Positions 12,900 to 64,000 of a stretch of DNA of 64,000 bases are shown piece by piece. A program made the position numbers and the translations under genes. The notes beneath the pieces were generated by a model. The model searched no databases, was not told the DNA's origin, and saw only the letters and a list, made by a program, of their open reading frames with translations. How positions within the stretch are numbered: position 1 is the stretch's first letter; every line of letters begins with the position of its first letter. Origin of the DNA: Isurus oxyrinchus. Its lineage: Eukaryota. The DNA is taken from assembly GCA_026770705.1 (NCBI GenBank), contig JANJGN010000026.1, positions 5,890,001 to 5,954,000 of the forward strand. Direction: 5' to 3'.

Positions 12900-13670
12900 G
12901 GACATAGATTCGCTACTGCAGAACAGTCCTAGCTGGTATTTCCTAGCCCATCTGTGTCATGTACATTCAGAAACAGGGAATCATTCATTGGATTTATGCT
13001 CCCTCAGTTTTTGTGTAATATAGAACTGCAAAAAAGTAATCATTCAGAGATTTTGTGCTCCACTCATTGCCTGCATCATGTAGATCCAGAAACAGGGAAT
13101 AAATAATTTGATTTCTGCTCCCACGTCTGTCAGTGTCATATAGGACCAGTAACAATGCATCAAACATAGAGCTTGTGTTCGCATGAACGCCTGTTCATTT
13201 CCGCCCCTCATGTGGAGATAATGCTCAAGGCTTATAATTCAAGATGTGCCTGAGTAACATTTGCCCCGCCACTGCGAATCATTAATAGGGTTTTCGCTTC
13301 AAGGACACTTCGTAGCAGATAATCCCTGCACCTAGAAGCAACTAGATTGTCATGTGTCAGATAGATCCAGGTTCTGGGGATAATTCCTAGCGTTTGTGTT
13401 CTCTGGTGAGTTGGCTGCACCCAGGTGTTTGATACTAACCCCAGGATTTATGCTTCCTAATGCTTCTAATATTCTCCAGTCTCCAGGAATCACATCAAGG
13501 CGTTCTGCTCCCTGGAGCGTCAGATAGGCCCCAGGCTCAAGGATTCATTCCTTTGGTTTGTTCCCAATGGTGTGCCACAATTGCCCAATGCTCCGAGAAT
13601 CATTCCTAGAATTCACACACCTGGTCCCTTAGAGAGGTCACAGGTTCTAGGAATCAATCTCAATTTTTTA
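12900..13670. repeat. degenerate ~57-60-bp tandem repeats
   Basis: Recurring units like TAGATCCAG...GGAATCATTC...GATTTGTGCTCC. Confidence 0.55.
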
Positions 13671-18720: not shown

Positions 18721-18783
18721 TACAGTTTTTAATTGTTTGGCTTGAAGCAAAATTAATTCTAAATAATATGTATTTTCTTGCAG

Positions 18784-19095
18784 GTATTGTGGTGCATCAT
18801 CCAACTGTTCTCCTCACCGTGAGCCCCACTGAAGAAATCATAAGCGGCAGATTTGCAACCATCGTCTGTTCAATCGTTGATTTCCGTCCAAATTCAATCA
18901 ACGTGAAATGGCTGAAGAAAGGACAGGCCATGGACTCGAGCTTCGTCACATCTCCCGGCTTTGAAGTGAACAGGAACTTCTCAGCGACCAGTCGACTGAG
19001 TGTCCCAGCTGGGGACTGCTTCAGTAACACGCTCTATACCTGCCAGGTCACTCATAATGGGGTCACTCAAAGCCAAAAAATCACCAGACCTCAGT
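18784..19095 (+). pseudogene. IGHM: IgM heavy chain CH2 exon (frame open, part of a pseudogene)
   Basis: Acceptor ttcttgcag, donor cagt|gtaaga. [42 protein letters not shown]...[28 protein letters not shown] shows the C1-set C-W-C pattern. Lies within ORF 18768..19178. Confidence 0.93.
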
Positions 19096-19784
19096 GTAAG
19101 AGTCGCAACCCGAGGAAGTTCAAGGTCATTCTTTGTGCTAAACTCTCTCCAAACCAAGGGTTATATTGGAATGATTAAAACTCAGAATGTGTCCCATTTA
19201 CTAATTTGCCCGTTTGTGTTTCCTTCCAAAGGAAACAAAACACACTAGAGAAATCCATTCATTTACAGAGCGTCTTGACCAGCATCAGATTGTCCAAAGC
19301 ACTTAACAGCCAATGAAAAACGGTGAAAATGTGCTAATTTTCGTAAATTGGAATATTCGGCAGCGATTTGCTGCACAACAGTCTCCTAGAAACTGGGACA
19401 TGATGCTGACTGGATTTATCTATTTATTTATTAGTTTCATTCTGTTTGTTGAGGGATATATGTTGGCCAGGAAACAGACACATTTCTGTTAAATATTTCG
19501 ATCGTTTTCCTTACTTTTTATTTCAGATTTCCAGCTGTATTTGGCTTTCAGAACTGAAGAGTATTACTAATTTTGCTGTTGGGGATGGTGTAACCGAACT
19601 CAACAGGGTCGTGGAAACAAGGAGAGAATGTCAGAAAGTTATACCTGGGTGCATGGAATTCTGGGACAGGCAGGTAACACTAAAATAGGGAATAGTACGT
19701 TAATAGACGGAGTCGATGAAAGGGAGCAAGCAATGAAGTCTAAATCGGGTTTGCACTGCATCCAAATGCATGAACGGAGTATCG

Positions 19785-27997: not shown

Positions 27998-28003
27998 AAT
28001 AAA
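27998..28003 (+). terminator. polyadenylation signal, secretory IgM form
   Basis: AATAAA 36 nt after the tailpiece stop codon. Confidence 0.6.
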
Positions 28004-28490
28004 GTATTTTCCTCCAATTCTGAAGTAAATATACAACCACTTAATTAATTGTGTTTTCCAGTTTTGCTAATGTTAGACCTGTTTATTTGACGTCGGGAAT
28101 TCACAAGTCTCAGACCAGAGCCTTGTAAAATCAGTGCCCCCAGCTCAGATACTCCCTGGGATTGAGACAGAATAATGCTCATTCATTACAGAATTCTGCA
28201 AAGTTAGTGCACTAATTTGCCCCTCGCTGAGTGAATTCTGACCATTTCCCATTTCCCACAAGCACACACAGCAGCAGCATTTAGATCACGTCGTTCATGT
28301 TTCACTTAAGGTCCATCCATTCAAAATTGTACCTGTTGGAGTTGCCGCATCGCACCCAATGGGAACAGATGTGAGGGTCACACGGGGAAGCGAATTGTAT
28401 CTCCACTTAGCCAGCATAGAGAGCGGGGACGGCATTAGTTAACGTAATGTACCTGCACCGCCCCCACACCCGCCCCCCCCCGCCCCCCCC

Positions 28491-28523
<33 letters not shown>

Positions 28524-28974
28524 AACAGAAACAACCAGGAAGGAAATTGTTTAGCCAACGAGAGGGAGTGGAGAGCGGAACATTAACTCACTAAACTCCT
28601 AGTCCCATTTAGAACTAACGGCTGTCTATGATATGGTTTCAGTACATGGCGGCTTTTAGCTTGCTGCGCTCAGATTGTAAACTTCAATCGTGGCAATCAT
28701 AATGCAGCATGATATCTATAAAATGATTTTCAATCTCTTGTTCTTGTAAATCAGAAGCTGCCAACTGCTCTCATAATCCAAAACTGAACTGTTGATTCCA
28801 TCCTCCCGTTTTTCCGGTTCTGTTTCTGGAGTTCTTCTGTTTAATTGTTGCATTCTTTCGCTTGATGATACATTGAAACCCACAGAAAACACATTCATTC
28901 ACAAAATGGCAAATAGTGTTCTCCATCGATAATACCTTCACGGTCACGCCCAGTTATTCATGTTCAGTGATCCG

Positions 28975-30114
28975 TGGAACAACAATTAAAGAACACACAC
29001 ACTGACACAAGCTCATAAACACACACACAGACAAAGATACACACACACACCCTGGCAAAAGATCACAAACATACACACACACACGCACACACAGACTCAC
29101 ACATACACAGAAATGCAGACTCACACACACACAAACACCCAAACACACGCACATACAAACATCCACACACATGCACACATACACACACACACCCGCAGAC
29201 AGACACACTCGCACACTTACAAAGACACACTCACCCAAACCCTGGCACGAGATCATGCACTCACACACATATACACTTGCACATGCACAGACTCACACAA
29301 CAAATATACACACGCATTATGACACAAGATGTCTCTCTCTGAGACAAACACACACAGATACACATGCATGCACGCACTCATGCACACATGCAAACAAACA
29401 CAAGCACACATACAGCCATATACTGACACAAGTTCCTAAGCACACTCAAATGCAAAGAAGCACACACACATTCTGACACAATTTCATTCTCCCACACACA
29501 CATATTCGTACACACACAGGCACAAACACAAACACGTACCTGCACAGCCACTGAAACAAAATTGCATGCACACACATACACAAGGGCAGACACACATACA
29601 CACACAATGGATCATGCACAGATATCTGAACACATAAACACAGACGAACATACACACAGACTGACAAAAGCNNNNNNNNNNNNNNNNNNNNNNNNNNNNN
29701 NNNNNNNNNNNNNNNNNNNNNNNNNNNNNNNNNNNNNNNNNNNNNNNNNNNNNNNNNNNNNNNNNNNNNNNNNNNNNNNNNNNNNNNNNNNNNNNNNNNN
29801 NNATGCCCGAACACATAAACACAGTTTGACATACAAACGGGCAGACAAAAACACAAAGGCAGACACAGAGGCACACACACACACAAACAGACATAAACAA
29901 GTACACACATACACACACATACAAAGATAGACACAAACGCACACAGACATTGGCACAAGCATGCGCACACAAACTCATGCATAAATGAGCACACATACCG
30001 GCATACAGACATGCACACATTCGGGCACACATGCAGGCTGACAGATAGACAGAAAGACAAACACACACACATACATAGAGACAAAGACACACACACACAC
30101 ATCCTGACACGAGA

Positions 30115-30156
<42 letters not shown>

Positions 30157-31560
30157 ATGCACACAAACACACAGATGCATACACACAGATACAAAAATAG
30201 TCACATGATCAAAATAGACAAACACAAGTGCAAACACCCACCTCCACATACTGATAACTACACACACAGAACCACACACAGGCAGAAGATCACATATACA
30301 CACACACTGACACAGACACAAACATATACAGGTACGCCAAACACACACACATGCATGCGCTTAGACACACATTCACCGCACACACACACACATACACACT
30401 CATACACAGGTTCATACACATGCATGGAAAAAGTGACACCCATGCAAAAACATGCACAAGCATACATAAACAAATAGACACACACACACACAATTGCACA
30501 CGCATTCACCTACATACACAAGCACAAGCACAAACATACATACACAAAGAAAGATACACACAGACGAGTATTGACGGAGCCATTTGCATAAGCGTACACA
30601 GATGCACATGCAAACACTCACACACACTGATAAATATACACAGGCAAACACACACAAACAAACCCACACAGACACGCAGACACACACTCACAAGAGCACA
30701 TGTATACAGAAAAAAAAACATGCACACTCACAGTATCACACAACAAGCACGCACATATGTAAACACGCGCACAAATATACACACACTCTCAACAAACAGG
30801 CACACACACTCATACACACACTAACACGCACACACAAACACAGGAACACACAAACACACACACACTTGGACACACACAGGCGCATGCCATTGTACCCGCA
30901 TGGGCACACACAAACACACAAGCACACACACCTAAGTATGCATACTCTCTCAAACACATGCACTCAGAGTCACACACATTCAAACATGTGTGTGCACACA
31001 CACAAAAATACACATGCATTAATACACACAACAGACACAAATGCAGATATGCACAACCCCATGAGCATACTCATACAGGACATGTAAGCATATACATGAA
31101 CATATTCATTTCTATGCTTCAACAAACACAACAATATAGGTCTAAAGGACATGTAAGCATATACATGAACATATTCATTTCTATGCTTCAACAAACACAA
31201 CAATATAGGTCTAAAGGCACACTATCATGCACAAATACAAATATATTCTGCACACACATTAACAAATTGACACACAGGCACACATACACATCGATGAACA
31301 GGCAGTTGCTTTTTCACAAACAGAACGATAAACAAATATGAAATATTCACACAATCACAATGATATAAAAACACACATAAACACACGTTTTAGTAGACAT
31401 GGACAAATAAACAGAGATGAAGACATAGTTATAAACATCCATCAACACGTAAAGGCACGCTTTAAAATACTCACACGTGCATGGGGGCAACATCTTTTAC
31501 AGAGTAAACATAGAACATAAAACGTCATAATATCAGATACATGAAAAGGCATGGACGTAC
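28975..31560. repeat. long degenerate (CA)n-rich tract in the CH4-TM intron (resumes 32900-33150)
   Basis: Direct observation. It is the source of the many HT- and CV-rich pseudo-ORFs. Confidence 0.95.
29672..29802. other. assembly gap
   Basis: Run of N. Confidence 0.99.
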
Positions 31561-32900
31561 ACAAAAGCAAACATAGCTCGAAAAACTCCACAGGTCTAAC
31601 AGCATCTGTAGAGAGGAATACGGTTAACGTTTCGAATCCAAATGAGTCTTCATCTGAACTAAGGAAAAATAGAAATGTGGTGAAATATAAACTGGTTTAG
31701 GGGGGTAGGACAGGTAGATCTCGATAGAGGGCCAGTGACAGTTGGAGGCAAAGAAGATATTTCCAAAGGTATCATAGACAAATTGACAAAGGCGTTTTGA
31801 CGGTGGTGATATCAGCTAAAGAATGTGCTAATGGGGACATTAATGGTAGAAAGCATGACGAGCAAGCGACAGATAGCCCTCGTGGGGGTGTGGTCGTGGG
31901 AAGAGATCGAAAGAGATTAAAAGGTGGAGATAAAACAATGGGTGGAAATAAATTTAAAAATATTAGGAATTTGTGGGAAAAGAAAAATGTATTCAAAAAT
32001 GATATCTTTAAAAATTATAAATTATTGCAAATATTCAACAATATGCAGACTGGGTGACTGCTTTGTGCAACACCTTCGGTCTGTCTGCAAGCATTAACCA
32101 GACGTCCCTGTCACTTGCCATTTCAATACTCCACCCTGCTCTCATGCCCACATGTCCGTCCTTGGCTTGCTGCAATGTTCCAGTGAAGCTCAACCCCAAC
32201 TGGAGGAACAGCACCTCATCTTCCAACTCGGCACTTTACAGACTTCCGGCCTTAACGTTTAGCTCAACAACTTTAGATCATGAACTCTCTCTTCCATCAA
32301 TATCCATTTCTGGATCCCCCTTTTCCAAAAATTTATAATTTCTACGATGCATTTTTTGAATATATTTTCCTTTTCCCACCTATTTCTATTATTGTAAAAT
32401 TTATTTCCATTCATTTTTTACCTCCACCTTTTAACCTATTTCGATCCCTTCCCCCACCTCACACCCACCCCTCATTTGCTCGTCCTGCTTTCTACTCTTA
32501 TTGTCACCATTAGCGCATTCATTTGCTAATATCACCACCGTCAACACACCTTTGCCCTTTTGTCTATGACATCTTTGGCAATTTCTTCTTTGCTTCCACC
32601 TATCACTAGCCCTCTAACCAGATCTACCTGTCCCACTTACCCACCCACCACCTCCTCCACCACCCCCGCTGCCAACACCACCACCGCCCCCCACCACTCA
32701 ACCCCCACACCCTCCCCGCTCCCCCAAACAAGCTTATATTTCACCTCATTTCTATTTTTCCTTAATTCTGTTGAAGAGTCATCCTGACTCGAACCATTAA
32801 CTGTATTTCTCTCCAAAGATGATGTCAGACTTGCGCAGTTTTTCCAGCTACTTTTGTTTTTGTTTCAGATTTCCAACATCCACAGTATTTTGCTTTTATG
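31560..32900 (+). mobile_element. Penelope-like element, 3' part with an inverted upstream pseudo-LTR
   Basis: 32040-32283 encodes a GIY-YIG C-terminus (RLGDCFVQHLRSVCKH...VTCHFNT...LEEQHLIFQLGTLQTSGLNV). 31560-32030 is an inverted copy of about 32330-32880. Confidence 0.85.
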
Positions 32901-33745
32901 GACATAAACAAACTCTTTAGCACAGACAATAATAAGTGAACATAAACATCAACGCAGAAACAGGGACATTAAAACATTCATACACACACATTTACAAATG
33001 AAAAAAAAATACACACACAGGCGCGCCACACATGAATAAGCATATCATGTTCATGCCATATGAACACACACATCAACACTCATACAACACGGCACATAAA
33101 CACAGTTACATGCAGAGCAAGAGACACTCGTGCACACATGCGCAAATATTTTTTAAAAAGGTAAATGTCAGGCTATAGACAGACGTGTATTTCAAATGTA
33201 CTTTTTCAGCGGACACAACTTCCAAAAATTGCTGGGAGCACATAAAGACCAAGAAAAGACACTGAGGCGATGTTCTTAATTATAAGCTAATTTAAGTTAA
33301 TTATATGCCAAACATTACTACCACAAATAAACAAACAAGATGAAAATTCACAAAGAGTTCAGAGTCTGAGAATTAGTAGCTATCAGTACCAATCATTAAA
33401 ATAATTGTTATCAATTATTAAACCTCTTGCAATTTACATCATAATACAATCCAATGATGGGCCGCACGTAATTGATCCAAAATGAACTGTCACCGAAGAG
33501 GGAAAAAAAACACATTTTCCAAAATGTGCAGGATGGGGAATGTAAAGTGAGAACAGCTGTGGAGTTAGTGACAGGCAGATATTCCTGAGAGTCACCAATT
33601 TATTAGCAGAAATGCAGTGAAAATTTAATGAGAAAACAAATCAATAGCTTGGGAAAGATACAATAGAATTAATACATATTTTGAAAAGTAAGATGCCCTC
33701 GATTTCTAACAATGTAATTAAATTTCCTCGGTTATATCCCTGTAT

Positions 33746-37440: not shown

Positions 37441-38193
37441 CCTGTTGAAATCGGAAGGCTATGAAACAGAAAGCCAGAGGCAGCATGGCCGAATTTATGA
37501 GAGATTTGCAGTAAGGTGATGCAGTGCATACTTTCCAAGGCAGTAAGTGCACAATTATCTTGAGGCTGCTTTAAAAACTCACATTGCAACTTATAACATT
37601 AGACAAGCATATTAATATCGATAATCACATGACAATCCTGCAGCCTGTATGCATATTTCTTGTCCTGTTTGAAAATTCTTGACTCGGGGCATTTTCTACC
37701 ACAGCTTGTGCATCATTTTGTGTTTAAAGGGTTTTTCATGTATATGAAAGTGTTAGAAAAAATTGAAAAGTTTTAAAGTCCGTCGAAGTGTTTTAAATCA
37801 TAACAAAACACTCATCTGCCTTCGGCCTGAAAAGGGACCCCATGCAGCTTGTATCCGGCGTGTGACGTCAGGAGGGGCGCACCGTCGCCAGAAGCCTATG
37901 CTACTTTTCACAGATCATTTTGTCCATGGGCAAAGCATCAGCCAAAGGATTAAATTCTGGCGACAGCCACTGAACCAGTCAAATTGGGATTCCTCAGAAC
38001 GATCAGGGCCAAATGCCTCTCATTCACCCCTGACCACAAAATCCAGGTCGGTATCTTTTTATGAGAAAATAAATTGTGATCATGCTGCAATCTCTGAGCG
38101 TCAACTCCATTGAAAAAAAAAACTTTTTATTCCCCCAAAACATAAACGTCAGTCCTGAAGCAGCTCGGCTAAACTGTTTTTATTTTAAATTAA

Positions 38194-38257
38194 TGTAATT
38201 AATGCAAAGGATCAAACCACCTAACTAACTCCCTGGAGCTTCACAGCAGTTATAAAT
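38194..38257 (+). promoter_or_regulatory. proximal promoter module of the GPCR pseudogene: homeodomain site + O/E(EBF)-like site + TATA
   Basis: TGTAATTAATG 38194-38204, CTCCCTGGAG 38229-38238, TATAAAT 38251-38257, ATG at 38308. Confidence 0.6.
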
Positions 38258-38307
38258 GTGACAATCTTTCAGTGATGTGCAGAAGGCATTCAGAACATTT
38301 GTTAAAA

Positions 38308-41300
38308 ATGCACGGATCAACAAAAGACCTTCTGTCTGCCATTTATTATCCAGTCCTTGCAACTATCGGGGTTCCAGGTGAAGTACTTAGTAATTCGATA
38401 CTGAAATCGGTTATCTGCAGGAATTCTACCATTTAGAAGCATTGAATATCCATAATGTAATACCCATTCTCCCATTTCGCCCTTTATCTATATAATTGTC
38501 CCCATTAATGGGGCAACTTTCCTCTTTTAACAAGTATATTTTTCCCCTCTAAAAGCACTTTTTTCCCACTTTATAGGTATAATGTCTCAATTTTGACAAT
38601 ATAATTTGTTCCCTTTGCCTAAAATTCTCGCCGCTAATGGCCTAATAATATGCTATTAATATGCTATTAATAATATGCGCAGGGTGCAATGACTCGCTGT
38701 TAGTGGCATAATATAAACTTGTTCAAAACAACATTTCACAATTTAAGTGCTATCATATCACCCTGCTAAGTGTGCAATTTCTTGCTGTTAGTGATAAAAT
38801 ATTACTCTTTTCAGGGTGAAATTTCTCGCTGTTACCGGTATAATATCACCCTTATAAGGGTGTAATTTTTCGCTTCAAGTGGTATTATATTACCCTGTTC
38901 AACGGTGTTTTGCACCATTTAGTTCTGGTGTATTTTCACCCTGTTATCACAGTGCAAATGCCTTTCTATTCTGTTACTGACATCGTTGCTGGACGAGAAT
39001 TATCACATTGTAATCACGGAGGATGTGTGATCATCTTCTGTTACTGCAGGTGTATTTTAACACTGACATTGCAGTCTAAATGTCTTTCCATTCTGTTTCC
39101 GGTATCATTACTGAAGGCGAGTTATCACATTGTAATCACGATGTGAATGTGATCAACTTCCGTTACTGACAGTCTAACTGTGGTTGAGTGATCACACTTT
39201 AATCGCAGTATGAATGTGATCGTGTTCTCTTACTGGCAGTCTAACTGTGCTTACGTTATCACACTTTAAACACGGTGCGAATGTGATCATCTTCTGTTAC
39301 TGACAGTCTAACTGTGGTTGAGCTATCACACTGTTCTCACGGTGCTAATGTAAACCTGTTGTGTTGTTCACATTGACAATGATCGAAAAGTTCCCACGAA
39401 TAATGCACTGATATAGAGCATTGTAACATTCAATATTCCCCCAATGAATTTGTTGGAAGGACATGAGCACCAGTTTCTAACAGATGTACAAACAATGTGA
39501 CAGTAGCCGTCCGATAAATATTCTATATTAGCAACACAATCAGAGAGGTGTGTTTCTGGTCTCAGTCTCCAACACTCATTGATTCAGCCCGTCTCACCTC
39601 TTCTGCATGAGCTGCTGCTGAAGCTTCTGCATTGACCATTGTTAACGCCAGAATTTCTTTCTGCTGATTGCACCGGGCAATGTCTCCCATTTTCCCGTCT
39701 CCGCTGTTTGTCCGTATTTGCGCAAGGCTGCGAAATTGGTTGCGTCTGTCGCCTCTGAGGCGCAAAGCTTTGATTTCAAATATCCACCACAGGACAACGT
39801 TGATAGTTGATCCCGACAGTGCAGTGCAGTACAGAGTAGTGCTTCATTACAAGAGGGACCTCACTCGGGAGGAGACCTTGTTTTCCGCCATTTCCGATCT
39901 TCCAGTTGACTACTATGTGAGGAGCTAGGATGGATCTTCACATGCAAGCAAACGCCCTGTCTGCAAGATCAGAAATCACTCATTGCCCCTTCACTCCTCG
40001 CTGTATGTGGATGTTTTTGAGCAAGTTTAATTCCCAAAGTTCCCAACAACGAATAGTTTACAATGATTGACTGGAAGGGAACTATATTGATCTTCAGTGA
40101 GATATAATCTGCTCCCTTGTTAGTTTCAGCACTTCTTGTTGTTTGTTTTGTTATCTACCTTCGTTTTTTATTTCCTGCAATGCTTTGCAGATGCGTTCAA
40201 CTTCTTGCTTATTCAAAAATTCTACATTGGTTTCTCTGTTAACGATGCCTGTTGTTCTCCATTAGTTTTCATTAAACTATTTGACATTCGTATAACTTTT
40301 ACCTGCCCAATATTGAATTAAGATTTCAATTTCCAAAGCTGAATCACTTGCCATTTGCAATTGCGCAACTGGGGACCACATCTGAAAGGTACAAATTCAT
40401 GCAGAATCCTATAACATTGTTGATTTGTTTATAGTTTGAGCAGTAGCCTTCCTGTTTTCGTTCTCCCCCAAACTCACACAAACAAATCCAGTCTCTTTCC
40501 ACCTTCTCTGTTTCCCTCTCAGTCTTTAAAGCAGCTAACTTGCCGGTGATTATGATCCTCTCACGAGGGAAATGCCATCTCTCCACGTGTATAACCTAAT
40601 ATTTACAATCCATGGCGGTAACGGATCTCCTGCTCATTATCACTGCTGTGATATTGAACCGGAATGCTGGTATATATTTTCCACTCAGTTTCCTGACAAT
40701 CACATCAGTATGCAGTCTGTGAAACCCTAATATATTGAGCCATAGGCAGCTCTGCCTGGTTAACTATAGCTTTCACCTTTGATCGATTTGTAGCCATTTG
40801 TTGCCAGAAGCTGAAAATAAAATGTTGTTACAAAAAAACGGCGGCACGGGTTATAGGGACAATCTGCTCAATCAGCTGTGTCAAAAACACCTTCCAGTAT
40901 TTTATATACGAACTTTTGTACATCATTGACAATGTAACCTGGTTCTGCGATGTAAAATAGATATTTTATACGTCACTTGCATGGATTGCCTATTACTGCA
41001 TTCATCACATTTTAAGTCCTTGTCTCCCATTCATTCTGATTTTAATGCTCAATGTACTGAGAGTCAGACACATTCTCGCAGCCAGTAGAGCTCGCAGGAG
41101 ACTCCAGACCCAGAGAAATGGAAACAATCACTGTGACCCTGAGATGGAGAAGAGGAGAAAGTCCATCATTTTACTCTTCTGTGTATCAGGAAGTTTCATC
41201 CTGTTATATTTGTTACTTTTTACAACTTTCCTCTATGTGCAAATTGGAAATGTTACTTACTTTTCAAATTCTGAAATCAATCTTTCAACATTCATTCTTG

Positions 41301-41443
41301 AGGAAAAAGCATATATGCTTCGGTTTTTGAGTTCCTGCATCAACCCTTTTATTTATGCAGGGACCCAGAGTAAATTCAGAGAGAAGTTAAAGAATAGACT
41401 GAAATATCCACTTCTTTTAATTGTTAAATTATTGGAACGATAA
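38308..41443 (+). pseudogene. GPR139/GPR142-like GPCR pseudogene (exon 1 38308-38377, exon 2 40535-41443)
   Basis: Exon 1 reads MHGSTKDLLSAIYYPVLATIGVP G|gtgaag (70 nt). Exon 2 reads NLPVIMILSRGKCHLSTCIT*YLQSMAVTDLL...DRFVAICCQKLK...SSCINPFIYAGTQSKFR. Stops at 40597-40599 and 40720-40722 plus a frameshift. The C-terminal part is ORF 41045..41443. Confidence 0.9.
38480..39360. repeat. two adjacent degenerate minisatellites (~43-bp, then 67-bp units) in the GPCR intron
   Basis: ATCACA anchors at 39124, 39191, 39258 and 39325 give a 67-bp period. Upstream units look like GCAATTTCTCGCTGTTAGTGGTATAATAT. Confidence 0.75.
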
Positions 41444-53590: not shown

Positions 53591-54760
53591 GGAAAACCCT
53601 TTCAAATGATATGTTGTTGGGGAGCGAAACAGTTGTGCATTTCAATTGCTGACAGATGGGTGAATTTGCATGTAGCAGCAGAGTTTCAATTCTGTTCTTA
53701 TTCATGATGTTAATCAGACCCGGGGTTATTTAATAATCTGGACAAAGATCAAATAAAGCGAAGGCTAATGGATCAGTTTCCACCTCGACATTGAAAGATC
53801 TTTCGAGGGATAACAAATAATTACTTGCTTATTCATGATCTTCCGCAGGCAACAGTGACAGATATTGAGACCTTTGCCGCATTTTGCAGTTGGGGAGCAA
53901 GAGAACTACATTACCCCAAGCGCATGTGCAGTTCTCACCCGAGATTGGGATAATGATTTGTTGCTATGAGTAGCCCATAATTTCTCTGGCGTGTCATCTT
54001 CTGGCTGTCAGGATGGCAAAAAAATGTGTTTGTGCATATTCTGTGGCGAGGGGCAGGGCCGTAAAATGTGACGAGCGATTCACTGGCTTTGGCGGAACCA
54101 AAAAGATCTCGCCGCCGAAAGGGGCTGTAAAATTCGGACTTTGCCATTAAATTTGATGAGTTATTTTTAATGATTCTGTTGTTTATGATTGATGCCCCTT
54201 GAAAATGAGACACTGTGGTTAGATTCGATTTATACTGTTTGATAACACAGGAGATGTCATCATAATTGGCCGAGTGAAAGTGTAGAAGGCGAATTAGGTG
54301 TCCATTTTTTCTTGCCCCTTATTCCTATCTTCAATGACAAGAGAGTGCGAGTGTGAAGCGGTGACTAGTGAGTTGAGAACAATGCATGAGTATTTGTTCC
54401 CATTTCAGAAAGCCTTTTACCTCCAAGATGTAAACAACACTAAGCAATAACATTGAGGTTCCTACCTAAAATTGTTAAATTTTGGTATCCAATATCAGTT
54501 CGAAGTCGGACTCTCTGTCTCCCACATGAATTTCCAAGGCCCTGGAGGCTGGCAGGGATGTTCGAGGCCCCTGCCAGCACGAGGAAGACAACTAAAAACT
54601 AAGCAGGAGCAGGCAACTTTCTTTATACATTGTTAAATTCACTCAGAGCAAAAGGGCCTCGAAGAAAATGACGGTGCTTCCGGGAGAGAAAACTTTGTGT
54701 GAGATGAACAAAAGCAGCAACGGATGGCACACAATGTATGACTCATGTTGGATTTTATTG

Positions 54761-55674
54761 TTAGCATCTTTTAAATAATTTAACAATCAGATTCAGTGGG
54801 TATTTCACGCCATTCTTTAACTCGTCTCTGAATTTACTCTGGGTCCCTGCATAAATAAAGGGATTGACGCAGGAACTCAGAAGCTGAAGCATTCGTGCGC
54901 TTTCCTCCAGAAGAAAATTTGATGCATTGAAATTGGAAGCGTCTAAGTAGCTAAGATTCGCAATTCGGACATAGAGGAAGTTTATAAGTCTTAACAAATA
55001 TAACAGGATGAAACTGCCCGAGATACAGAAGAGCAAAACGATGGATTTCCTTCTCTTCAGCATCTCTGGGTCACTTTGATTCTCTCCACTGCTCTGGATC
55101 CGGAGTCTCTTGCGGGCTCGACTGGCCGTTACAATGTGTCTGATGGTCAGAGCATTGAGCAGCAAAATAAGGATGAATGAGAGGCAAAGGGTGAAAACGG
55201 CGATTATGCTTTCATAAGCCACCCATGCAGGTGACGGATGGAATATTGATTTTGAGTTGCATTGCCAGGGTATATTGTCAATGATAATAGCAGGCTCACA
55301 AATAAAATACAAGGGGATGCTTTTAACACAGTTCAGTACACAGACAGTTCCTATCACTGCAGCCGCCATTTTTTCAGTGCAATATTTAATTTTCAACTTC
55401 TGGCAGCAAATGGCTACAAATCGGTCAAAGGTGAAAGTGACTGTTAACCACACAGAAGAATCGATGACACCATAGTTTAGCACCAGTCTGAAGCTGAAGA
55501 CCGGAGTGATGGATAGGAGACTGAACGGGAAATAAATACCTACAATCCGGTTCAATATCACAACTGTGATCCCGACAAGCAGATCCGTCACGGCCATGGA
55601 CATCAGGTAGTAAGTGATACATTTGGAGAGACCGCATCTTCCTCGAGTCAGAATCACAATCACTGCCAGATTAG
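54761..55674 (-). CDS. GPR139/GPR142-like class A GPCR, exon 2 (intact gene, 327 aa with exon 1)
   Basis: Uninterrupted ORF (track 54761..55708) with NLAVIVIL, MAVTDLL, FTFDRFVAIC, KRRKSIVLLF and SSCVNPFIYAGTQSKFR. Acceptor gctgtcacag|CT AAT is phase 1. AATAAA follows the stop directly. Confidence 0.9.
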
Positions 55675-56209
55675 CTGTGACAGCAAAACGCAGCCAGCGA
55701 ATAGCCAATGTTGAGAAAGAAATTTAGAACATAAAATGTTGGAAATTCTCAGTCAGGTAGCAGTTGAAATGAGAGGAACGAGTTTGCATGTTAGAGAGAT
55801 GATCTGGAGGAAAATATTCTAAAACACAGCAATCTTTTCTGTACTGTCAGCAACACTAAGGGCTAACCCAAAGGTGAACATTAAACGCCCTGCATTGTGA
55901 CTCTGAAATACAATCAATGTTGTTCTCATTCAATGATTAGAGACGAGAAAATATAAGAATACTCTGACGTATTGGAAAATCGAAGGTTAATTGGTACGTA
56001 TAGAGCTTGAAATTGGGGAGAAAGCTATCAGATGACATTTAATGTAGAGAAATAAAAAGCACTTCAAATGAGGACAAACGTTCAACAAAAACAAAGCTAC
56101 TACTTAACTGAAAAGAAGATGAAGGAGATCTGGTGCATCTGAGCTGTAACAATTCGAAGTTAAAGGAACAAGGCTTCACAGCTACTTGTAAAGCTGATCA
56201 TGCTCACTC

Positions 56210-56310
56210 TGGTTCAGGTGTGGCTCAGTTTGCAGCAATCTCATTTTTGAGTCAAAAGGTTTAGAGTTCAAGCCCAACTGTTGGACTTCAGCAAAGTTGC
56301 ACTACCGATG
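56210..56310 (+). mobile_element. tRNA-derived SINE head
   Basis: A-box-like gtggctcagtttgcagc and B-box-like gagttcaagccc. Too degenerate to be a tRNA. Confidence 0.55.
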
Positions 56311-56986
56311 TGCTAAAACAAAATACTGAATATTGGTCCAATAACTCGGGAATATAAAAACTAACTTAAGAGATAGCTGTTAATCACATGCCAGCGCAAG
56401 GAGCAATATATGCACATGGCAAATTGAGGTAATTCAACAGCTGTGTCAATAACACAATAGAGCAACATTTACAACGTGATAAATCATCCATGGTGACAGT
56501 GCCAATAATACAATTGATCTACATTGAGCTGTGATACTAGTGCGCTAAATATTTCACCCACATTAATAATATCGATAACAACATATAATTACATTTAGAC
56601 TGAGAGGCGGCACTGCTAAGTGGGAGAAAATTCACAGTTAAAGAGATGAAATGGCATTGGTGAAGCAAATATAGTAAACCTTGAAATGGAAGTAAGTCTA
56701 GTGGCAATGGGAAGAAACTGTTCTCGTGAAGGGGAGAAATGATACCCTTAAAGTGGAGAAAATAGACCAGTAATAACCAGTAACATTGCGAGGAAAGGCA
56801 AGGTTTAATATCATTTAAAAGAAGATGCACTAAACGTGGAGATAAGGATACTGCAAAAAAGGGAAAGCTTTATAAAAAACAAATCCTGTTAATGGGGTGA
56901 ACCATAGAGAAGCAGTACAGCTAAATTAAAGAAGTGATAGAGTGAAAAATGATTCTCGTAACTGGTAACTAACCCTAATACTTTAC

Positions 56987-57056
56987 CTGGAACACCGATA
57001 GCTGCAAGAACGGGATAGTAAATCGCAAACACCAGCCCTTCTGGTATGCCATACAT
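56987..57056 (-). CDS. GPR139/GPR142-like GPCR, exon 1
   Basis: ATG...MYGIPEGLVFAIYYPVLAAIGVP G|gtaaag. The 70-nt exon plus the 914-nt exon 2 gives 984 nt in frame. The P|AN intron position in TM1 matches my recollection of vertebrate GPR139. Confidence 0.88.
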
Positions 57057-57106
57057 TTCTCTCATCAGCTCCGAGTGCGCTCTGTGCTACATCGAAAGAC
57101 TGTTAC

Positions 57107-57171
57107 ATTTATACATGATGTCGGCCTCTAGGGAGACAACGAGAAGGTTTGGCCTTTTACCATTAATTACA
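57107..57171 (-). promoter_or_regulatory. proximal promoter module of the intact GPCR: homeodomain site + O/E(EBF)-like site + TATA
   Basis: On the minus strand: TGTAATTAATG (57161-57171), CTCCCTAGAG (57126-57135), TATAAAT (57107-57113). Conserved with the paralogous promoter at 38194-38257. Confidence 0.65.
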
Positions 57172-57529
57172 CTAACTGAAAAAAACATTTTAGTGCACCT
57201 GCTGTCCCGCTCGCGTTCATGTTTTTGATGGAATGGAATCTGTTTTCAAGGACACTGGCGCGTCTCCAAATTAAAATACTCAGACAGGAGAGTACGGTCC
57301 AAGTTTCGTTTTTTCCTAATAAATAACTAACAAGCCAAATAAGCAATTCTAATTGAGGTACTAAGCACTGTGGACGAGCATCCAGGGCTTTAAACTCTCC
57401 AGGAAAACATTACAAATTTCTCACTCTTGATCATTTTTCAGCCCGTATGAACATGGAGCACCTGTAATGTGGCTCCCCTTCATTTCTTGAATGAGGAACC
57501 AATAAGTCGCCATCCATCATAAGCCTCTC

Positions 57530-60400: not shown

Positions 60401-61291
60401 TCAAATAAATATCCAGCAATTGTCACCGTTTATGCCATTTGGTAATAGATTGAAAGGGTATTTAAATGCATTTTTCAACCCGTTTTGAATTTAATCTGGG
60501 TCCCTGCATACATAGGCGTATTGGTGCAGGAACTAAGGAGTTAGAACATCTATCGGCTTTCCTGCAGAATTAATTTTGGGTCATTGGAGATAGAATTGAT
60601 AGAACAGCTATTTCCTGTAATTTCTGCAAACAGGAAACTTACAATATGCGTCAACGCCAGCAGGAAGAAACTGCCTGAGATGGAGAAGACTGCAACAATA
60701 GACCCATCTGTGGGTCACTCTGATTCTCTCCATTTCTGTGGGATAAGAGTCTGCTGCAGGATCTACTTTAGTGTAGAATATTTCTGAATGTCTCAGTATC
60801 AAGCAGCAAAACCAGGAGGTTCGAGAGACATGGGGTTAGAATACGGTCCAGCAGGTCAAACATTCTCCATGGAAATGAAATATAAAATGCGTTCCCTATG
60901 ATAGTGCACCAGGTTTGCATATGAAATAAAAATGGGTGTTTATGAAAGAGAACAGCACATAGATCATTCCTAAATTTACAGCTGCTGTTTTCTAATTGCA
61001 GTATTTCATTTTCAGCTCCTGGAGAAAAATGGCTAGGAAGCGGTAAAAGGTGAAAGTGAAAGTTGACCAGAGAGTACAACCTCTGGAACCAAAGTTTGAA
61101 GCAACAAAGTTGACACGCAAGAATGGTAGATGGAAAACTGACTGGAAAATAAAAAGCCTGAAATGGGCTTAATATCACGGTAATGCTAATGACAAGTAAA
61201 TCTGTCACCACCACGGATACCAGATACGGCGTGATACATTGGGAGAGACCACATGTTCCTCGGGAAAAGATCACAATCATTAGAAAGTTAG
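60401..61291 (-). pseudogene. GPR139/GPR142-like GPCR pseudogene, exon 2
   Basis: NFLMIVIFSRGTCGLSQCITPYLVSVVVTDLL (ORF 60768..61280), then frameshifts. The C-terminal SSCTNTPMYAGTQ is recognisable at about 60495-60535. No exon 1 found. Confidence 0.85.
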
Positions 61292-62959
61292 CTGGAAGGC
61301 AGAGAGAAAGAGAGGAGAGAATTAGTGCCGAAACTCTCAGCTACACCAGCAGTTTTGTCGGAGAATGGTATGGAATTTGGATCATGAATACTTGATTCAA
61401 CGCTGGAACTCATTAATTTACCAATGTAATACTACTGTTTTTTATTAATATTGTCCTAATTAAATTGAAAGTTGGAACATGAAATAACACAAAACACTTA
61501 TTTTCTGATTCTTGTAAAATTTTATGCAATCGAGAAGTAGAAGGAATTGAACAAGACCAACGCATTAAGTTGACAAAAGTACAAATAATAAATCAGTACA
61601 TTTGCTCGTTTAAAATGTGGTAAAAAATAACGTATGAAATCTTAAACCGTTATAATAGTTAAAGCAATATAATGTCAGGAAATAAGATATGGATAAAACT
61701 CATTCCTAAGAAATACCTGAAGGACAATGGAAAATGAAGTTGAGTTAACTCCATTGATTCAATTCGGGTTTTGTTCCTGTGGAAAAATAAGTTAAAGAGC
61801 TTCAGCAGTTTTTTGCAGCTCAATGATTGCTGTAGTGGAAGCTTAAGTCTGGCAGCAGTTGTGAAGATTATCAGTTGAAGAAGCAGAAAGACCTCGGTTT
61901 GGAGTCTCATCAAAAGAGCGACAGAGCAGATAGTGCTGTCCTTCCTCAGGAGTATGCAACTAGGTTAGGGACTCGAGATCGGGATTAGCGCTCAAACCCA
62001 GGGCTTGAACACTGAGAATTCAAAATTTAGTTCCCTGAAAGAAGGTGGCTATGAGTGTAATAAATGTCGGCTCAAAGTGTATCACACAGCCTTGTTAACA
62101 AATAGCATCTTAGGAGAATTGTATGGAGCAGTTAACAGTAGCATCAGAGTTAAAAATGGTCTTCATAACAGTTCATTGATTGCAATTATTTGTTAAATTT
62201 ACGAATAAACAAGTGGAGGATAAACGAAAATATCAGTAACACATTTGACTATCATTTATAATTTTGTGCCAATTAGAAAATATGGTGATCTGTAATAGTT
62301 ATGCTCAAACTGCCACAAAAAATCCCGTCCACAAATTGTATTCCTTCTCCCACAGTTAGCTCATTCAGTTATCCAACAACAACCCTTCCCAATGTTCTGT
62401 TCTTCTCTAAACTATTTGCTGTGCCATTTGAATTATTGCTGGTAGCAATTTGGATATGAGACTTCCTGTTGCTTCATTTTGATCCTTCTAAATGCGGTGA
62501 AAAGCTGAAGCCCAAATACAAATCCTGCCAATAAGCTGTCACCTCCTGTCAATTGAACTATATTCAGATTATCCATCAACAAATCAGATGAGCTTTGTAC
62601 ATACCACAGCCATCGCGAGTTAAATTTAGGTCGATATCAAAAACATCTAGGCATATAAAACCTGTTTAACTAAGAAATTCATGTTTTAATGACATTATTG
62701 AAGTAACAATTAAGCTACATTGTGCATCACGTGTATGATTGCCAAAACGTCCATGAACACAAGACACAAAATTCGCGGGAACACATAAAGCAATCTTGAA
62801 TGCTCGGCTGTTAGAGGGCAGCCAAACACCCGTAGAAGTCAGATAGTAAACATCTGAATCTCAAGGCTTCACAGTTAAACAAAGATTGATAAGACCTAAT
62901 TCAGGAAAAATATGTAGAATACAATGAATTCAGATTCAGAATGATTCCGTTTCGCATTT

Positions 62960-63124
62960 TGAATGGTTCAGATAACTGACTGGAAACTTAGCAACCGTAA
63001 ACTGGCTTAATACCAGTGTAATGATAATAACAAGGAGATCCATCACCGCCATGGATGCCAGATACTGTGTATCTCGAGAGACCACATCTTCCTCGGGATA
63101 GGATCACGATAGTCAGAAAGTTAG
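62960..63124 (-). pseudogene. GPR139/GPR142-like GPCR exon 2, 5' fragment
   Basis: NFLTIVILSRGRCGLSR/TQYLASMAVMDLLVIIITLVLSQF...FPVSY, then homology is lost. Its upstream intron duplicates 61292-62100. Confidence 0.8.
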
Positions 63125-64000
63125 CTATTAGGCAGAGAGAGAGGGAGAGAGAGAGAGAGAAAGAAAGAGAGGAGAGAGAAGGGAAGAATTAATGCTCAAA
63201 CTCCCAGCTGGACCATCAGTTTGGCTGGAGAATAGTATGGCATATGGACCATCAATAATTCATTCACCGCTGGAACTGATTAGTTTACCAGTGTATTAAT
63301 GCTGGTCCTTTTTTTATTTATATTGTCCCAAATAAACTGGAAGTCGGAATATAAATAACACAAAACAATTATTTTCCGATTCATGAAAATTTTATGTAAC
63401 CTAGAAGTTGAATGTATTGAGCTTCACTAACGTGACGAAAGGGCATTGAAAATGGCATAAAAATACAGATGAAAAATCACTACATTTATTCATTTAAAAA
63501 TACGGTAAATAATGTTATGAAACATTAAACCACTTTAATAGTGAAACCAATCGGATGACAGGAAATAAGATATGGGTAATAACGAATTCTTAACAAATAT
63601 CAGAAGGAACCAAGGAACAATGCAAAAGAAAAGTTGAGCCAACACCATTGATTCAATTTGGGTTTTGCCCCTGTGGAAACAAGTCAAAGCTCATCAAAGG
63701 CTTTATTGCAGTTCAGTGATTGCTGTAATGGGAGGTTAGGTCTCGCAGTAGTAGTGAGAATTTTCAACTGTTAAAGCAGAAAGGCCTCGGTTTAGAGCCT
63801 CATCAGAAGGACGACAGAATAGATAGTGTTGAATTTGCTCAGGGTCATGGAGCTAGGCTTCCGACACAAGGTCGGAAGTAGGGCTCAAACACAGGGTTTT
63901 CCGAATGAACAGTGAGATTTCAAAATTAATTTCGGCTAAATAAAGTGGCTATGAGAATAAGGAATTCCGGCTCTGAAGGTTATCACACATACTTGACAAC
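63125..64000. repeat. segmental tandem duplicate of 61292-62100 (GPCR intron)
   Basis: Collinear similarity, e.g. aaactctcagctacaccagcagtttt / aaactcccagctggaccatcagtttg and ccattgattcaatt.gggttttg. Confidence 0.85.

What the first reader, a model, noticed from the sequence alone, without database searches (positions are those of the whole stretch)
57056..57171. GPR139-like paralog promoters share an olfactory-receptor-style homeodomain + O/E(EBF) + TATA module: candidate shark chemoreceptor family
Seen: both GPCR copies with a visible exon 1 carry TGTAATTAATG (identical), then 24-25 nt, CTCCCTRGAG, then 12 nt, TATAAATGT, with the TATA exactly 57 nt from the ATG in both (57161-57107 minus; 38194-38257 plus). 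The intervening bases are visibly diverged. Established: paired homeodomain (Lhx2-type TAAT core) and Olf1/EBF sites (TCCCNNGRG-like) characterise mammalian odorant-receptor promoters. GPR139 and GPR142 respond to aromatic amino acids. Sharks have few classical ORs but sense amino acids well. Inference: this birth-and-death GPCR family may be an unrecognised amino-acid chemoreceptor repertoire of olfactory neurons. Alternatively, since EBF1 is also the B-cell factor and the genes lie among IgM relics, it could be lymphocyte-expressed.
Basis: partly seen in the sequence, partly recalled or inferred. Interest (0 to 1): 0.85.

Follow-up and report, generated by a model that had tools for sequence, protein, structure and literature searches.

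The report
Conserved promoter of shark GPCR paralogs
Two old copies of a receptor gene family that has expanded greatly in sharks still share a ~170-base promoter whose TATA box, homeodomain-type site and O/E(EBF)-like site resemble mammalian smell-receptor promoters, but nothing yet shows the genes are used in the nose.

Summary
Copy A (minus strand, intact) and copy B (plus strand, a pseudogene) carry TGTAATTAATG, then 25 or 24 nt, CTCCCTRGAG, then 12 nt, TATAAATGT, with the TATA 57 nt before the ATG in both.

Between the two genes only exon 2 and a ~250-nt block (promoter, 5'UTR, exon 1) can be aligned. The 169 nt before the ATG are 66% identical with almost no indels. Intron and flank segments sit at or near the shuffle background. 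Each copy is closer to genes of other shark orders (75-76% aa) than to the other copy (65%), so the block has survived a deep split and is most likely a constrained TATA promoter.

The motifs match published O/E, LIM-homeodomain and TATA consensus strings for odorant-receptor promoters. With two sequences their extra conservation is only marginal (P about 0.04-0.29), and the homeodomain site also fits NKX6.

I could not test olfactory expression.

The "GPR139" label is loose (33 bits), and GPR139's ligand-contact residues are mostly replaced.

Other first-stage notes report the same cassette on other pieces of this genome. I did not verify them.

The parts
57172..57225 (-). Copy A: upstream part of the conserved promoter block. 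Homology to copy B starts sharply near 57225.
   Evidence: blastn block A57225-56975 / B38137-38390, 70%; this segment 65% identical; the next 169 nt upstream are at shuffle background.
57161..57171 (-). Copy A: homeodomain-type site TGTAATTAATG (TAATTA core).
   Evidence: Matches the V$LHXF consensus ttAATTaat; its reverse complement matches V$NKX6 TTAAttac.
57126..57135 (-). Copy A: O/E(EBF)-like site CTCCCTAGAG.
   Evidence: Matches the V$NOLF core TCCCyngrg quoted in PMC3247239.
57105..57113 (-). Copy A: TATA box TATAAATGT, 57 nt before the ATG.
   Evidence: Matches O$VTBP staTAAAwr.
57057..57084 (-). Copy A: conserved CAGA (57084-57081), with its A 30 nt after the first T of the TATA. This gives a predicted initiator/TSS at 57083 and a predicted 27-nt 5'UTR containing CTCGGAG 12 nt before the ATG.
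   Evidence: Alignment. The spacing is inferred from general knowledge of TATA promoters. A third paralog contig shows CTCAGAG + 12 nt + ATG (table 7). No TSS was mapped.
56987..57056 (-). Copy A: exon 1 coding part (70 nt, phase 1), followed by a GT donor at 56986.
   Evidence: An in-frame upstream ATG also lies at 57065.
54761..55674 (-). Copy A: exon 2, an intact open frame including the stop, after the acceptor cacag at 55679-55675. Class-A GPCR.
   Evidence: Pfam 7tm_1 E=1.4e-19. 76% identity to the best shark 'probable GPR139' protein.
38137..38307 (+). Copy B: homologous promoter block. Homeodomain site 38194-38204, O/E-like 38229-38238, TATA 38251-38259, conserved CAGA 38280-38283.
38308..38377 (+). 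Copy B: exon 1 coding part (70 nt), followed by a GT donor at 38378.
40535..41443 (+). Copy B: exon 2, disabled by in-frame stops and a frameshift near 40720-40733. Pseudogene.
60484..61295 (-). Copy C: degraded exon-2 pseudogene with no detectable exon 1 or promoter block.
   Evidence: tblastn 40-45% with a frame change. nhmmer and blastn find no third promoter/exon 1 copy.
62966..63125 (-). Fragment D: short relic of the start of an exon 2.

Best explanation
The stretch is the selectively conserved proximal promoter and short 5'UTR of a two-exon class-A GPCR family that has expanded massively in sharks. A canonical TATA box should place the start site about 30 nt downstream, at a conserved CA (57083 in copy A, 38281 in copy B), which leaves a ~27-nt leader. 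Two candidate activator sites sit upstream at fixed distances: an O/E(EBF)-like TCCCTRGAG 12 nt before the TATA, and a TAATTA homeodomain-type site 24-25 nt further up. The cassette was inherited through the family's duplications and kept by purifying selection on sequence and spacing. Copy B still carries it because it became a pseudogene only after long constraint. Shown: the motifs, their spacing, the confinement of non-coding similarity to this block, and the depth of the A/B split. Inferred: the start site, which factors bind, and the tissue in which it fires.
For: Between the A and B gene regions only exon 2 (73%) and the promoter/exon 1 block (70%, 256 nt) align; introns and outer flanks do not. 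The 169 nt before the ATG have 111 matches against 56.6 +/- 9.9 for shuffles, with only 6 gap columns. Segments of the same length further upstream and at both intron ends are at shuffle background, and the 3' flank is only modestly above it. Block identity of 66% exceeds the 57% at four-fold degenerate sites (P=0.027). A and B are 65% identical as proteins, yet each is 75-76% identical to Heterodontus proteins, and they sit in different supported clades (A with Rhincodon and Carcharodon, support 0.95; B with Heterodontus, support 0.90). The TATA-ATG (57 nt) and O/E-TATA (12 nt) distances are identical in both copies. A third paralog contig keeps the same 12-nt distance from CTCRGAG to the ATG. 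The motifs match the published consensus strings.
Against: Only two promoters could be compared, and one belongs to a pseudogene. Motif blocks are not significantly better conserved than the rest of the block (P 0.04-0.29 depending on the null). No transcript, splice junction or start site was observed. The RNA-labelled runs held none of the gene's words, and the one exon 1-like contig in X5 was unspliced and ran more than 200 nt upstream of the predicted start. Past gene conversion of the 5' end cannot be fully excluded.
Confidence: 0.7

Rival explanations
1. One reading: the cassette is an odorant-receptor-style promoter bound by Lhx2-type and Ebf-type factors in olfactory sensory neurons, and the family is an unrecognised shark olfactory chemoreceptor repertoire.
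For: The composition (O/E core, LIM-homeodomain site and TATA within ~110 nt of the predicted start) is the one enriched in mouse OR promoters: 78% have a conserved O/E site within 200 bp, and 39% have a TATA at -60 to -10. The sites are separated, as in OR promoters, not juxtaposed as in Greek-Island enhancers. The family is very large, clustered and rich in pseudogenes, and its variability lies in the outer halves of TM3-TM6 and in ECL2/ECL3. Published shark genome papers stress a paucity of ORs and GPCRs. Other first-stage notes report the same cassette at eight more genes; I did not verify them.
Against: There are no expression data. The gene was absent from all RNA-labelled runs. The catshark study found no GPCR among the top 50 genes specific to its 'brain & olfactory epithelium' library. 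Homeodomain and O/E-like sites are individually unspecific. EBF and LIM-homeodomain factors act in many other cell types (my own knowledge).
Confidence: 0.25
2. Lymphoid or other immune-cell promoter: the O/E-like site is used by EBF1 in B-lineage cells, or by another factor in leukocytes, in keeping with the genes' position among Ig/TCR relics.
For: An Ig C1-set exon lies at 18768-19178 in the same window. Other notes place family members among TCR V segments; I did not verify them. Another first-stage note read the same element as kB/EBF-like.
Against: Linkage alone does not predict expression; mammalian OR genes also lie beside the TCR alpha locus (my own knowledge). There are no expression data either way. 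Very large class-A GPCR expansions are usually sensory.
Confidence: 0.1
3. No motif-level function: the identical blocks are chance runs inside residual or conversion-maintained similarity of the 5' gene end, and the real regulatory logic lies elsewhere.
For: At 66% identity, runs of 11 and 9 arise in 29% of simulations. Copy B is a pseudogene and so is under no present constraint. Four-fold sites are still 57% identical, so part of the similarity could be neutral.
Against: Anchored intron and upstream segments of the same age show no similarity above shuffles, while the block has z of about 5.5 and almost no indels. The longest runs coincide with a textbook TATA box at a textbook distance from a conserved CA, and with two known site types. 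The A/B split predates shark orders. Promoter identity (66%) is not higher than exon identity (73-74%), so there is no sign of recent conversion.
Confidence: 0.12

Closest known systems
Mammalian odorant-receptor proximal promoters (O/E + homeodomain sites, TATA in a subset; Young et al. 2011, PMC3247239)
   Same: An O/E-type core TCCCYNGRG, a LIM-homeodomain-type TAATTA site and a TATA box all lie within ~110 nt of the presumed start. The region is AT-rich and is not a CpG island by GC content. The gene is a clustered, pseudogene-rich class-A GPCR.
   Different: This is a different GPCR family with the coding sequence split over two exons. The spacing is rigid (12 nt and 24-25 nt), whereas mouse OR promoters are described by enrichment, not fixed geometry. 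Binding and tissue are unknown, and n=2 here.
Greek-Island composite Lhx2/Ebf motif of OR enhancers (Monahan et al. 2017, PMC5608512)
   Same: The same two site types are involved.
   Different: The composite motif needs directly adjoining sites, and a 2-bp insertion already impairs it. Here the sites are 24-25 nt apart and next to a TATA box, so this is a promoter arrangement, not an enhancer composite.
GPR139 / GPR142 (aromatic amino-acid-sensing class-A receptors)
   Same: Human GPR139 is the only solved structure matched at E<1e-5. An aromatic residue is kept at 3x33.
   Different: The match is only 33 bits. 5x43 is A (H in GPR139), 6x48 is mostly Y (W), 6x51 is F/L/Y (R), and 7x38 is Y/F (N). 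'Probable GPR139' is an automatic name also given to mollusc GPCR expansions.

Membership tests
Odorant-receptor-type proximal promoter | O/E (Olf1/EBF) site within 200 bp of the start site | tested here: met
   TCCCTAGAG and TCCCTGGAG fit the V$NOLF core TCCCyngrg. This is a string match only, and the two positions after the core do not fit.
Odorant-receptor-type proximal promoter | Homeodomain (Lhx2/Emx2-type) site within 200 bp of the start site | tested here: met
   GTAATTAAT fits V$LHXF ttAATTaat. It equally fits V$NKX6 TTAAttac on the other strand.
Odorant-receptor-type proximal promoter | TATA box at -60 to -10 from a mapped start site (a subset of ORs) | tested here: inconclusive
   A canonical TATAAATG is present with a conserved CA 30 nt downstream. 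No start site could be mapped.
Odorant-receptor-type proximal promoter | Sites enriched across the gene family relative to background | not testable with these tools
The metagenome scan gave only 24-31% relatives over long matches.
Odorant-receptor-type proximal promoter | Activity in olfactory sensory neurons; Lhx2 and Ebf occupancy | not testable with these tools
   No RNA run held the gene, and run names and tissues are coded.
Greek-Island composite Lhx2/Ebf motif | Lhx2 and Ebf sites directly juxtaposed at a fixed distance | tested here: not met
   The sites are 24-25 nt apart.
GPR139/GPR142 receptors | Close sequence kinship with GPR139 | tested here: not met
   phmmer against the PDB gives GPR139 as the only hit, at 33 bits, E=3.8e-7.
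GPR139/GPR142 receptors | Ligand-pocket residues F109, H187, W241, R244, N271 | tested here: not met
   The residue list is from PMC5430874. In 91 family members the majority residues are Y/F, A, Y/W, F/L/Y and Y/F (using the alignment, which is uncertain in TM5 and TM7).
Rhodopsin-class (class A) GPCR | 7tm_1 domain over the whole exon 2 | tested here: met
   Pfam PF00001, E=1.4e-19, residues 13-286.
Birth-and-death sensory receptor repertoire | Large lineage-specific expansion, clusters with pseudogenes, variability concentrated near the ligand pocket | tested here: met
   The 120 best hits (414 bits or more) are all from sharks, 83 of them from one species. At least 14 Atlas clusters have 50 or more members. 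The window holds one intact gene, two pseudogenes and one fragment. Entropy peaks lie at the outer ends of TM3-TM6 and in ECL2/ECL3.
Birth-and-death sensory receptor repertoire | Expression in sensory cells | not testable with these tools
   Searches gave no usable RNA evidence.

The most novel reading that the evidence does not exclude
The shark 'GPR139-like' expansion is a previously unrecognised vertebrate olfactory receptor family. Its members would be switched on in olfactory neurons through an ancestral, rigidly spaced homeodomain + O/E + TATA promoter, the same logic as OR genes. That would supply much of the odorant repertoire that sharks seem to lack.
Probability: 0.2. Interest if true: 0.9.

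Novelty: new variant of a known kind. Interest (0 to 1): 0.5.

Why it matters
Shark genome papers repeatedly report very few ORs, and even a paucity of GPCRs. Yet sharks carry hundreds of genes of this class-A family, and I found no paper in the held library that discusses it. A promoter cassette kept across a split older than the shark orders, built from the same site types as OR promoters, turns "what are these receptors for?" into a quick test. Existing tissue RNA-seq sets can be mapped to the family, and the cassette can be checked genome-wide. If the genes prove olfactory, this would be a new vertebrate odorant-receptor family, and would show that the Lhx2/Ebf promoter logic is older or more portable than the OR family. 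If not, it is still a clean example of long-term promoter conservation in a birth-and-death family.

Tried and rejected

2. The metagenome scan with a family alignment gave 23 loci, but the matches covering most of the query were only 24-31% identical (distant GPCRs, probably from invertebrate hosts). They are useless for promoter comparison.

3. A third promoter/exon 1 copy in the window was sought with nhmmer and blastn. None was found, and copies C and D lack it.

4. RNA evidence was sought with the look-up of sequencing runs on exon 2. No run on record as RNA held it, and X1 and X2 (kind unknown) held 0.21-0.25 of the words. Read laying at 80% likeness showed hundreds of paralog contigs on exon 2 and exon 1 in X1, but no spliced joint, no start site and no readable paralog promoter. 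Contigs cannot show these.

5. The idea that the three motifs are significantly better conserved than their surroundings was rejected as unproven with two sequences.

6. Transfer of GPR139's aromatic amino-acid ligands to this family was rejected on pocket residues.

7. No supplementary expression tables of the catshark paper are held.

The spliced exon 1 + exon 2 protein was never joined or searched; exon 2 was searched by reference alone. Copy B was read through its breaks with X only, inside a script, for the tree.

Full report
**The observation.**
- Copy A (minus strand): TGTAATTAATG at 57171-57161, CTCCCTAGAG at 57135-57126, TATAAATGT at 57113-57105, ATG at 57056.
- Copy B (plus strand): the same strings at 38194-38204, 38229-38238 (CTCCCTGGAG) and 38251-38259, ATG at 38308.
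- The spacers are 25/24 nt and 12/12 nt, and the TATA-to-ATG distance is 57 nt in both copies.
- Pattern searches find exact copies of the first string only at these two places. The second string has one further exact match, at 13508, and TATAAATGT has four others.
- A loose module (TAATTA within 120 nt and TCCCYNGRG within 60 nt upstream of TATAAA) occurs only at these two places in the window, and never in 200 Markov simulations. The two sites are homologous, so this counts as one origin.

**Gene anatomy.** tblastn with a shark homologue maps four family members.
- Copy A: exon 1 at 57056-56987, and exon 2 open through to its stop at 54761. The donor GT is at 56986 and the acceptor cacag at 55679-55675. 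The junction codon is G|CT, giving ...GVP-A-NLAVI..., as in annotated shark proteins.
- Copy B: exon 1 at 38308-38377 and exon 2 at 40535-41443. Exon 2 has three in-frame stops and a frameshift, so B is a pseudogene.
- Copy C (61295-60484) is a degraded pseudogene, and fragment D lies at 63125-62966.
- Neither nhmmer nor blastn finds a third promoter/exon 1 unit.
- I searched exon 2 by reference only. The spliced exon 1 + exon 2 model was not joined.

**Is the block more than leftover similarity?**
- blastn of the two gene regions with 3 kb of flank aligns only exon 2 (73%) and a 256-nt block, A57225-56975 against B38137-38390 (70%). Introns and outer flanks do not align.
- Within the block, identity is 65% upstream of the homeodomain site, 91-100% in the three motifs, 56% and 42% in the two spacers, 60% from the TATA to the ATG, and 74% in the exon 1 coding part.
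- The 169 nt before the ATG give 111 matches, against 56.6 +/- 9.9 for shuffled partners, with six gap columns.
- Segments of equal length anchored further upstream and at both intron ends are at shuffle background. The 3' flank is only modestly above it.
- Four-fold degenerate sites of exon 2 are 57% identical. The block's 66% exceeds that modestly (P=0.027).
- The near absence of indels contrasts with the flanks. The 12-nt and 57-nt spacings are exact, which argues for constraint on geometry. That last step is inference.

**Depth of the comparison.**
- A and B are 65% identical as proteins, but each is 75-76% identical to Heterodontus francisci proteins.
- In a FastTree of 97 sequences, A groups with Rhincodon and Carcharodon genes (support 0.95) and B with Heterodontus genes (support 0.90). 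Their common ancestor spans the whole sample.
- The two promoters have therefore evolved apart since before the shark orders separated. I infer this from the tree; the dates would come from my own knowledge.
- Promoter identity is not higher than exon identity, so recent gene conversion is unlikely.

**Are the motifs themselves special?** With two sequences this cannot be shown.
- At 66% identity, a longest run of 11 or more occurs in 44-45% of simulated 172-column alignments. Runs of 11 and 9 together occur in 28-29%.
- At the 57-60% identity of four-fold sites or of the rest of the block, the joint probability is 0.04-0.09.
- The whole block is well supported as conserved. The three footprints inside it are suggestive only.
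- Other conserved pieces exist: CAAAACAT, CAAACC in the first spacer, TCTTTC after the TATA, and CAGA with its A exactly 30 nt after the first T of the TATA in both copies.
- That CA fits a TATA-directed initiator. It predicts starts at 57083 and 38281 and a 27-nt leader (inference).
- One paralog contig in run X5 shows CTCAGAG, 12 nt, ATG. Copy A has the same 12-nt distance after CTCGGAG, and copy B after TTCAGAA (table 7).

**Comparison with odorant-receptor promoters.**
- Young et al. 2011 (PMC3247239) report that 78% of 314 mouse OR promoters have a conserved O/E site within 200 bp. Homeodomain matrices are enriched and conserved, and a TATA match lies at -60 to -10 in 39%.
- Their consensus strings are V$NOLF ...TCCCyngrgar..., V$LHXF ...ttAATTaat..., V$NKX6 TTAAttac and O$VTBP staTAAAwr.
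- Both shark copies fit the O/E core TCCCYNGRG, the LHXF core and the TATA string.
- The homeodomain string also fits NKX6 exactly on the other strand, so it is not specific.
- Monahan et al. 2017 (PMC5608512) show that the composite Lhx2/Ebf motif of OR enhancers requires adjoining sites and is rare in OR promoters. The 24-25-nt separation here is promoter-like, not enhancer-like.
In function it is untested.

**The receptor family.**
- Exon 2 is a 7tm_1 domain.
- The protein search returned 2084 proteins at E<=1e-10. The best 120 (414 bits or more) are all from sharks: 83 from Heterodontus francisci, and others from Heptranchias, Rhincodon, Stegostoma, Pristiophorus, Scyliorhinus, Mustelus, Carcharodon and Chiloscyllium. 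They are mostly auto-named 'probable GPR139'.
- No hit exceeds 76% identity, so the window's own species is not in that annotation set.
- The ESM Atlas lists at least 14 clusters of this kind with 50 or more members.
- Human GPR139 is the only solved structure matched, at 33 bits.
- The residues needed for activation by Trp/Phe and surrogate agonists are F109, H187, W241 and N271, with R244 as the polar anchor.
- In 91 family members the majority residues at these positions are Y/F, A, Y/W, Y/F and F/L/Y respectively. Amino-acid ligands therefore cannot be inferred from the name.
- Sequence entropy peaks in the outer parts of TM3-TM6 and in ECL2/ECL3, while the intracellular side is conserved. 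That is what a ligand-diversifying repertoire looks like, but it does not say which tissue.

**Expression.**
- The single run search, on exon 2 of copy A, found no holder on record as RNA. Eight runs guessed to be RNA held none of its words.
- Laying four runs at 80% likeness showed hundreds of paralog contigs in X1, which covers the introns and so looks like DNA.
- X5 (RNA?) gave 21 paralog-like contigs, and X6 (RNA?), of similar size, gave one.
- No exon 1-exon 2 joint was seen. The exon 1-like contig of X5 runs on into intron-like sequence and continues more than 200 nt upstream.
- Tissues are coded, so nothing can be said about olfactory versus lymphoid expression.
- The catshark sensory study found no GPCR among the top 50 genes specific to its 'brain & olfactory epithelium' library, and it does not mention this family. 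Its supplements are not held.

**Literature and earlier notes.**
- Searches for GPR139 together with shark or cartilaginous-fish terms, for 'GPR139-like', and for shark GPCR expansions found no paper on this family. The whale-shark genome paper speaks of a paucity of GPCRs in cartilaginous fishes.
- Within this scan, other first-stage readers reported the same kind of cassette on other pieces of the same genome: s1-870781 (four genes, 'HD-18-HD-2-O/E-11-TATA'), s1-864214 (two genes) and s1-869162 (two genes).
- These are unverified AI notes. I could not see their sequences, so they are leads that the cassette is family-wide, not evidence.

**Verdict.**
- The best-supported reading is a constrained, TATA-directed proximal promoter inherited across an ancient shark GPCR expansion, carrying homeodomain-type and O/E-like sites (confidence about 0.7).
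- That it works as an OR-style promoter in olfactory neurons is a reasonable and cheaply testable hypothesis (about 0.25).
- A lymphoid reading (about 0.1) and a reading with no motif-level function (about 0.12) remain open.

Noticed in passing
window 38308-41443 (+): Copy B keeps an open exon 1, both splice sites and the promoter cassette, but its exon 2 has three in-frame stops and a frameshift. It is a pseudogene with an intact-looking 5' end.
   Followed up: yes
window 56956-57356 vs 38008-38408: The CpG observed/expected ratio around the promoter is 0.93 in the intact copy A (16 CpG in 400 nt). It is 0.49 in pseudogene B and 0.54 for the whole window. This may mean A's promoter is protected from germline methylation, but the sample is small.
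   Followed up: partly
window 57063-57065 (-): Copy A has an in-frame ATG three codons upstream of the family-typical start (M-R-E-M-Y-G...). Copy B has none.
   Followed up: no
window 18768-19178 (+): An open frame encodes an immunoglobulin C1-set domain (Pfam E=1.1e-15).
   Followed up: partly
window ~28000-33000: A long low-complexity, strongly strand-skewed tract (GC skew to -0.32, AT skew to +0.43) gives Cys/Val-rich and His/Thr-rich pseudo-ORFs. A run of about 131 N lies between about 29660 and 29810.
   Followed up: no
Read laying on window 54600-57400: Two runs guessed to be RNA, of similar size, differ sharply: X5 has 21 contigs resembling family paralogs and X6 has one. If both are RNA, this hints at tissue-specific transcription of family members, but tissues are coded and X5's exon 1-like contig is unspliced.
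   Followed up: partly
loci L001-L023: JGI metagenome contigs encode GPCRs sharing the FTFDRF motif and, over matches covering most of the query, 24-31% identical to the shark family. They are presumably host DNA of invertebrates in symbiont metagenomes.
   Followed up: no
window 55990-56087 (intron of copy A): Several X1 contigs replace about 85-96 nt here with 22-34 other letters (tables 5 and 5c). This suggests a repeat family or an indel-variable element in the intron.
   Followed up: no
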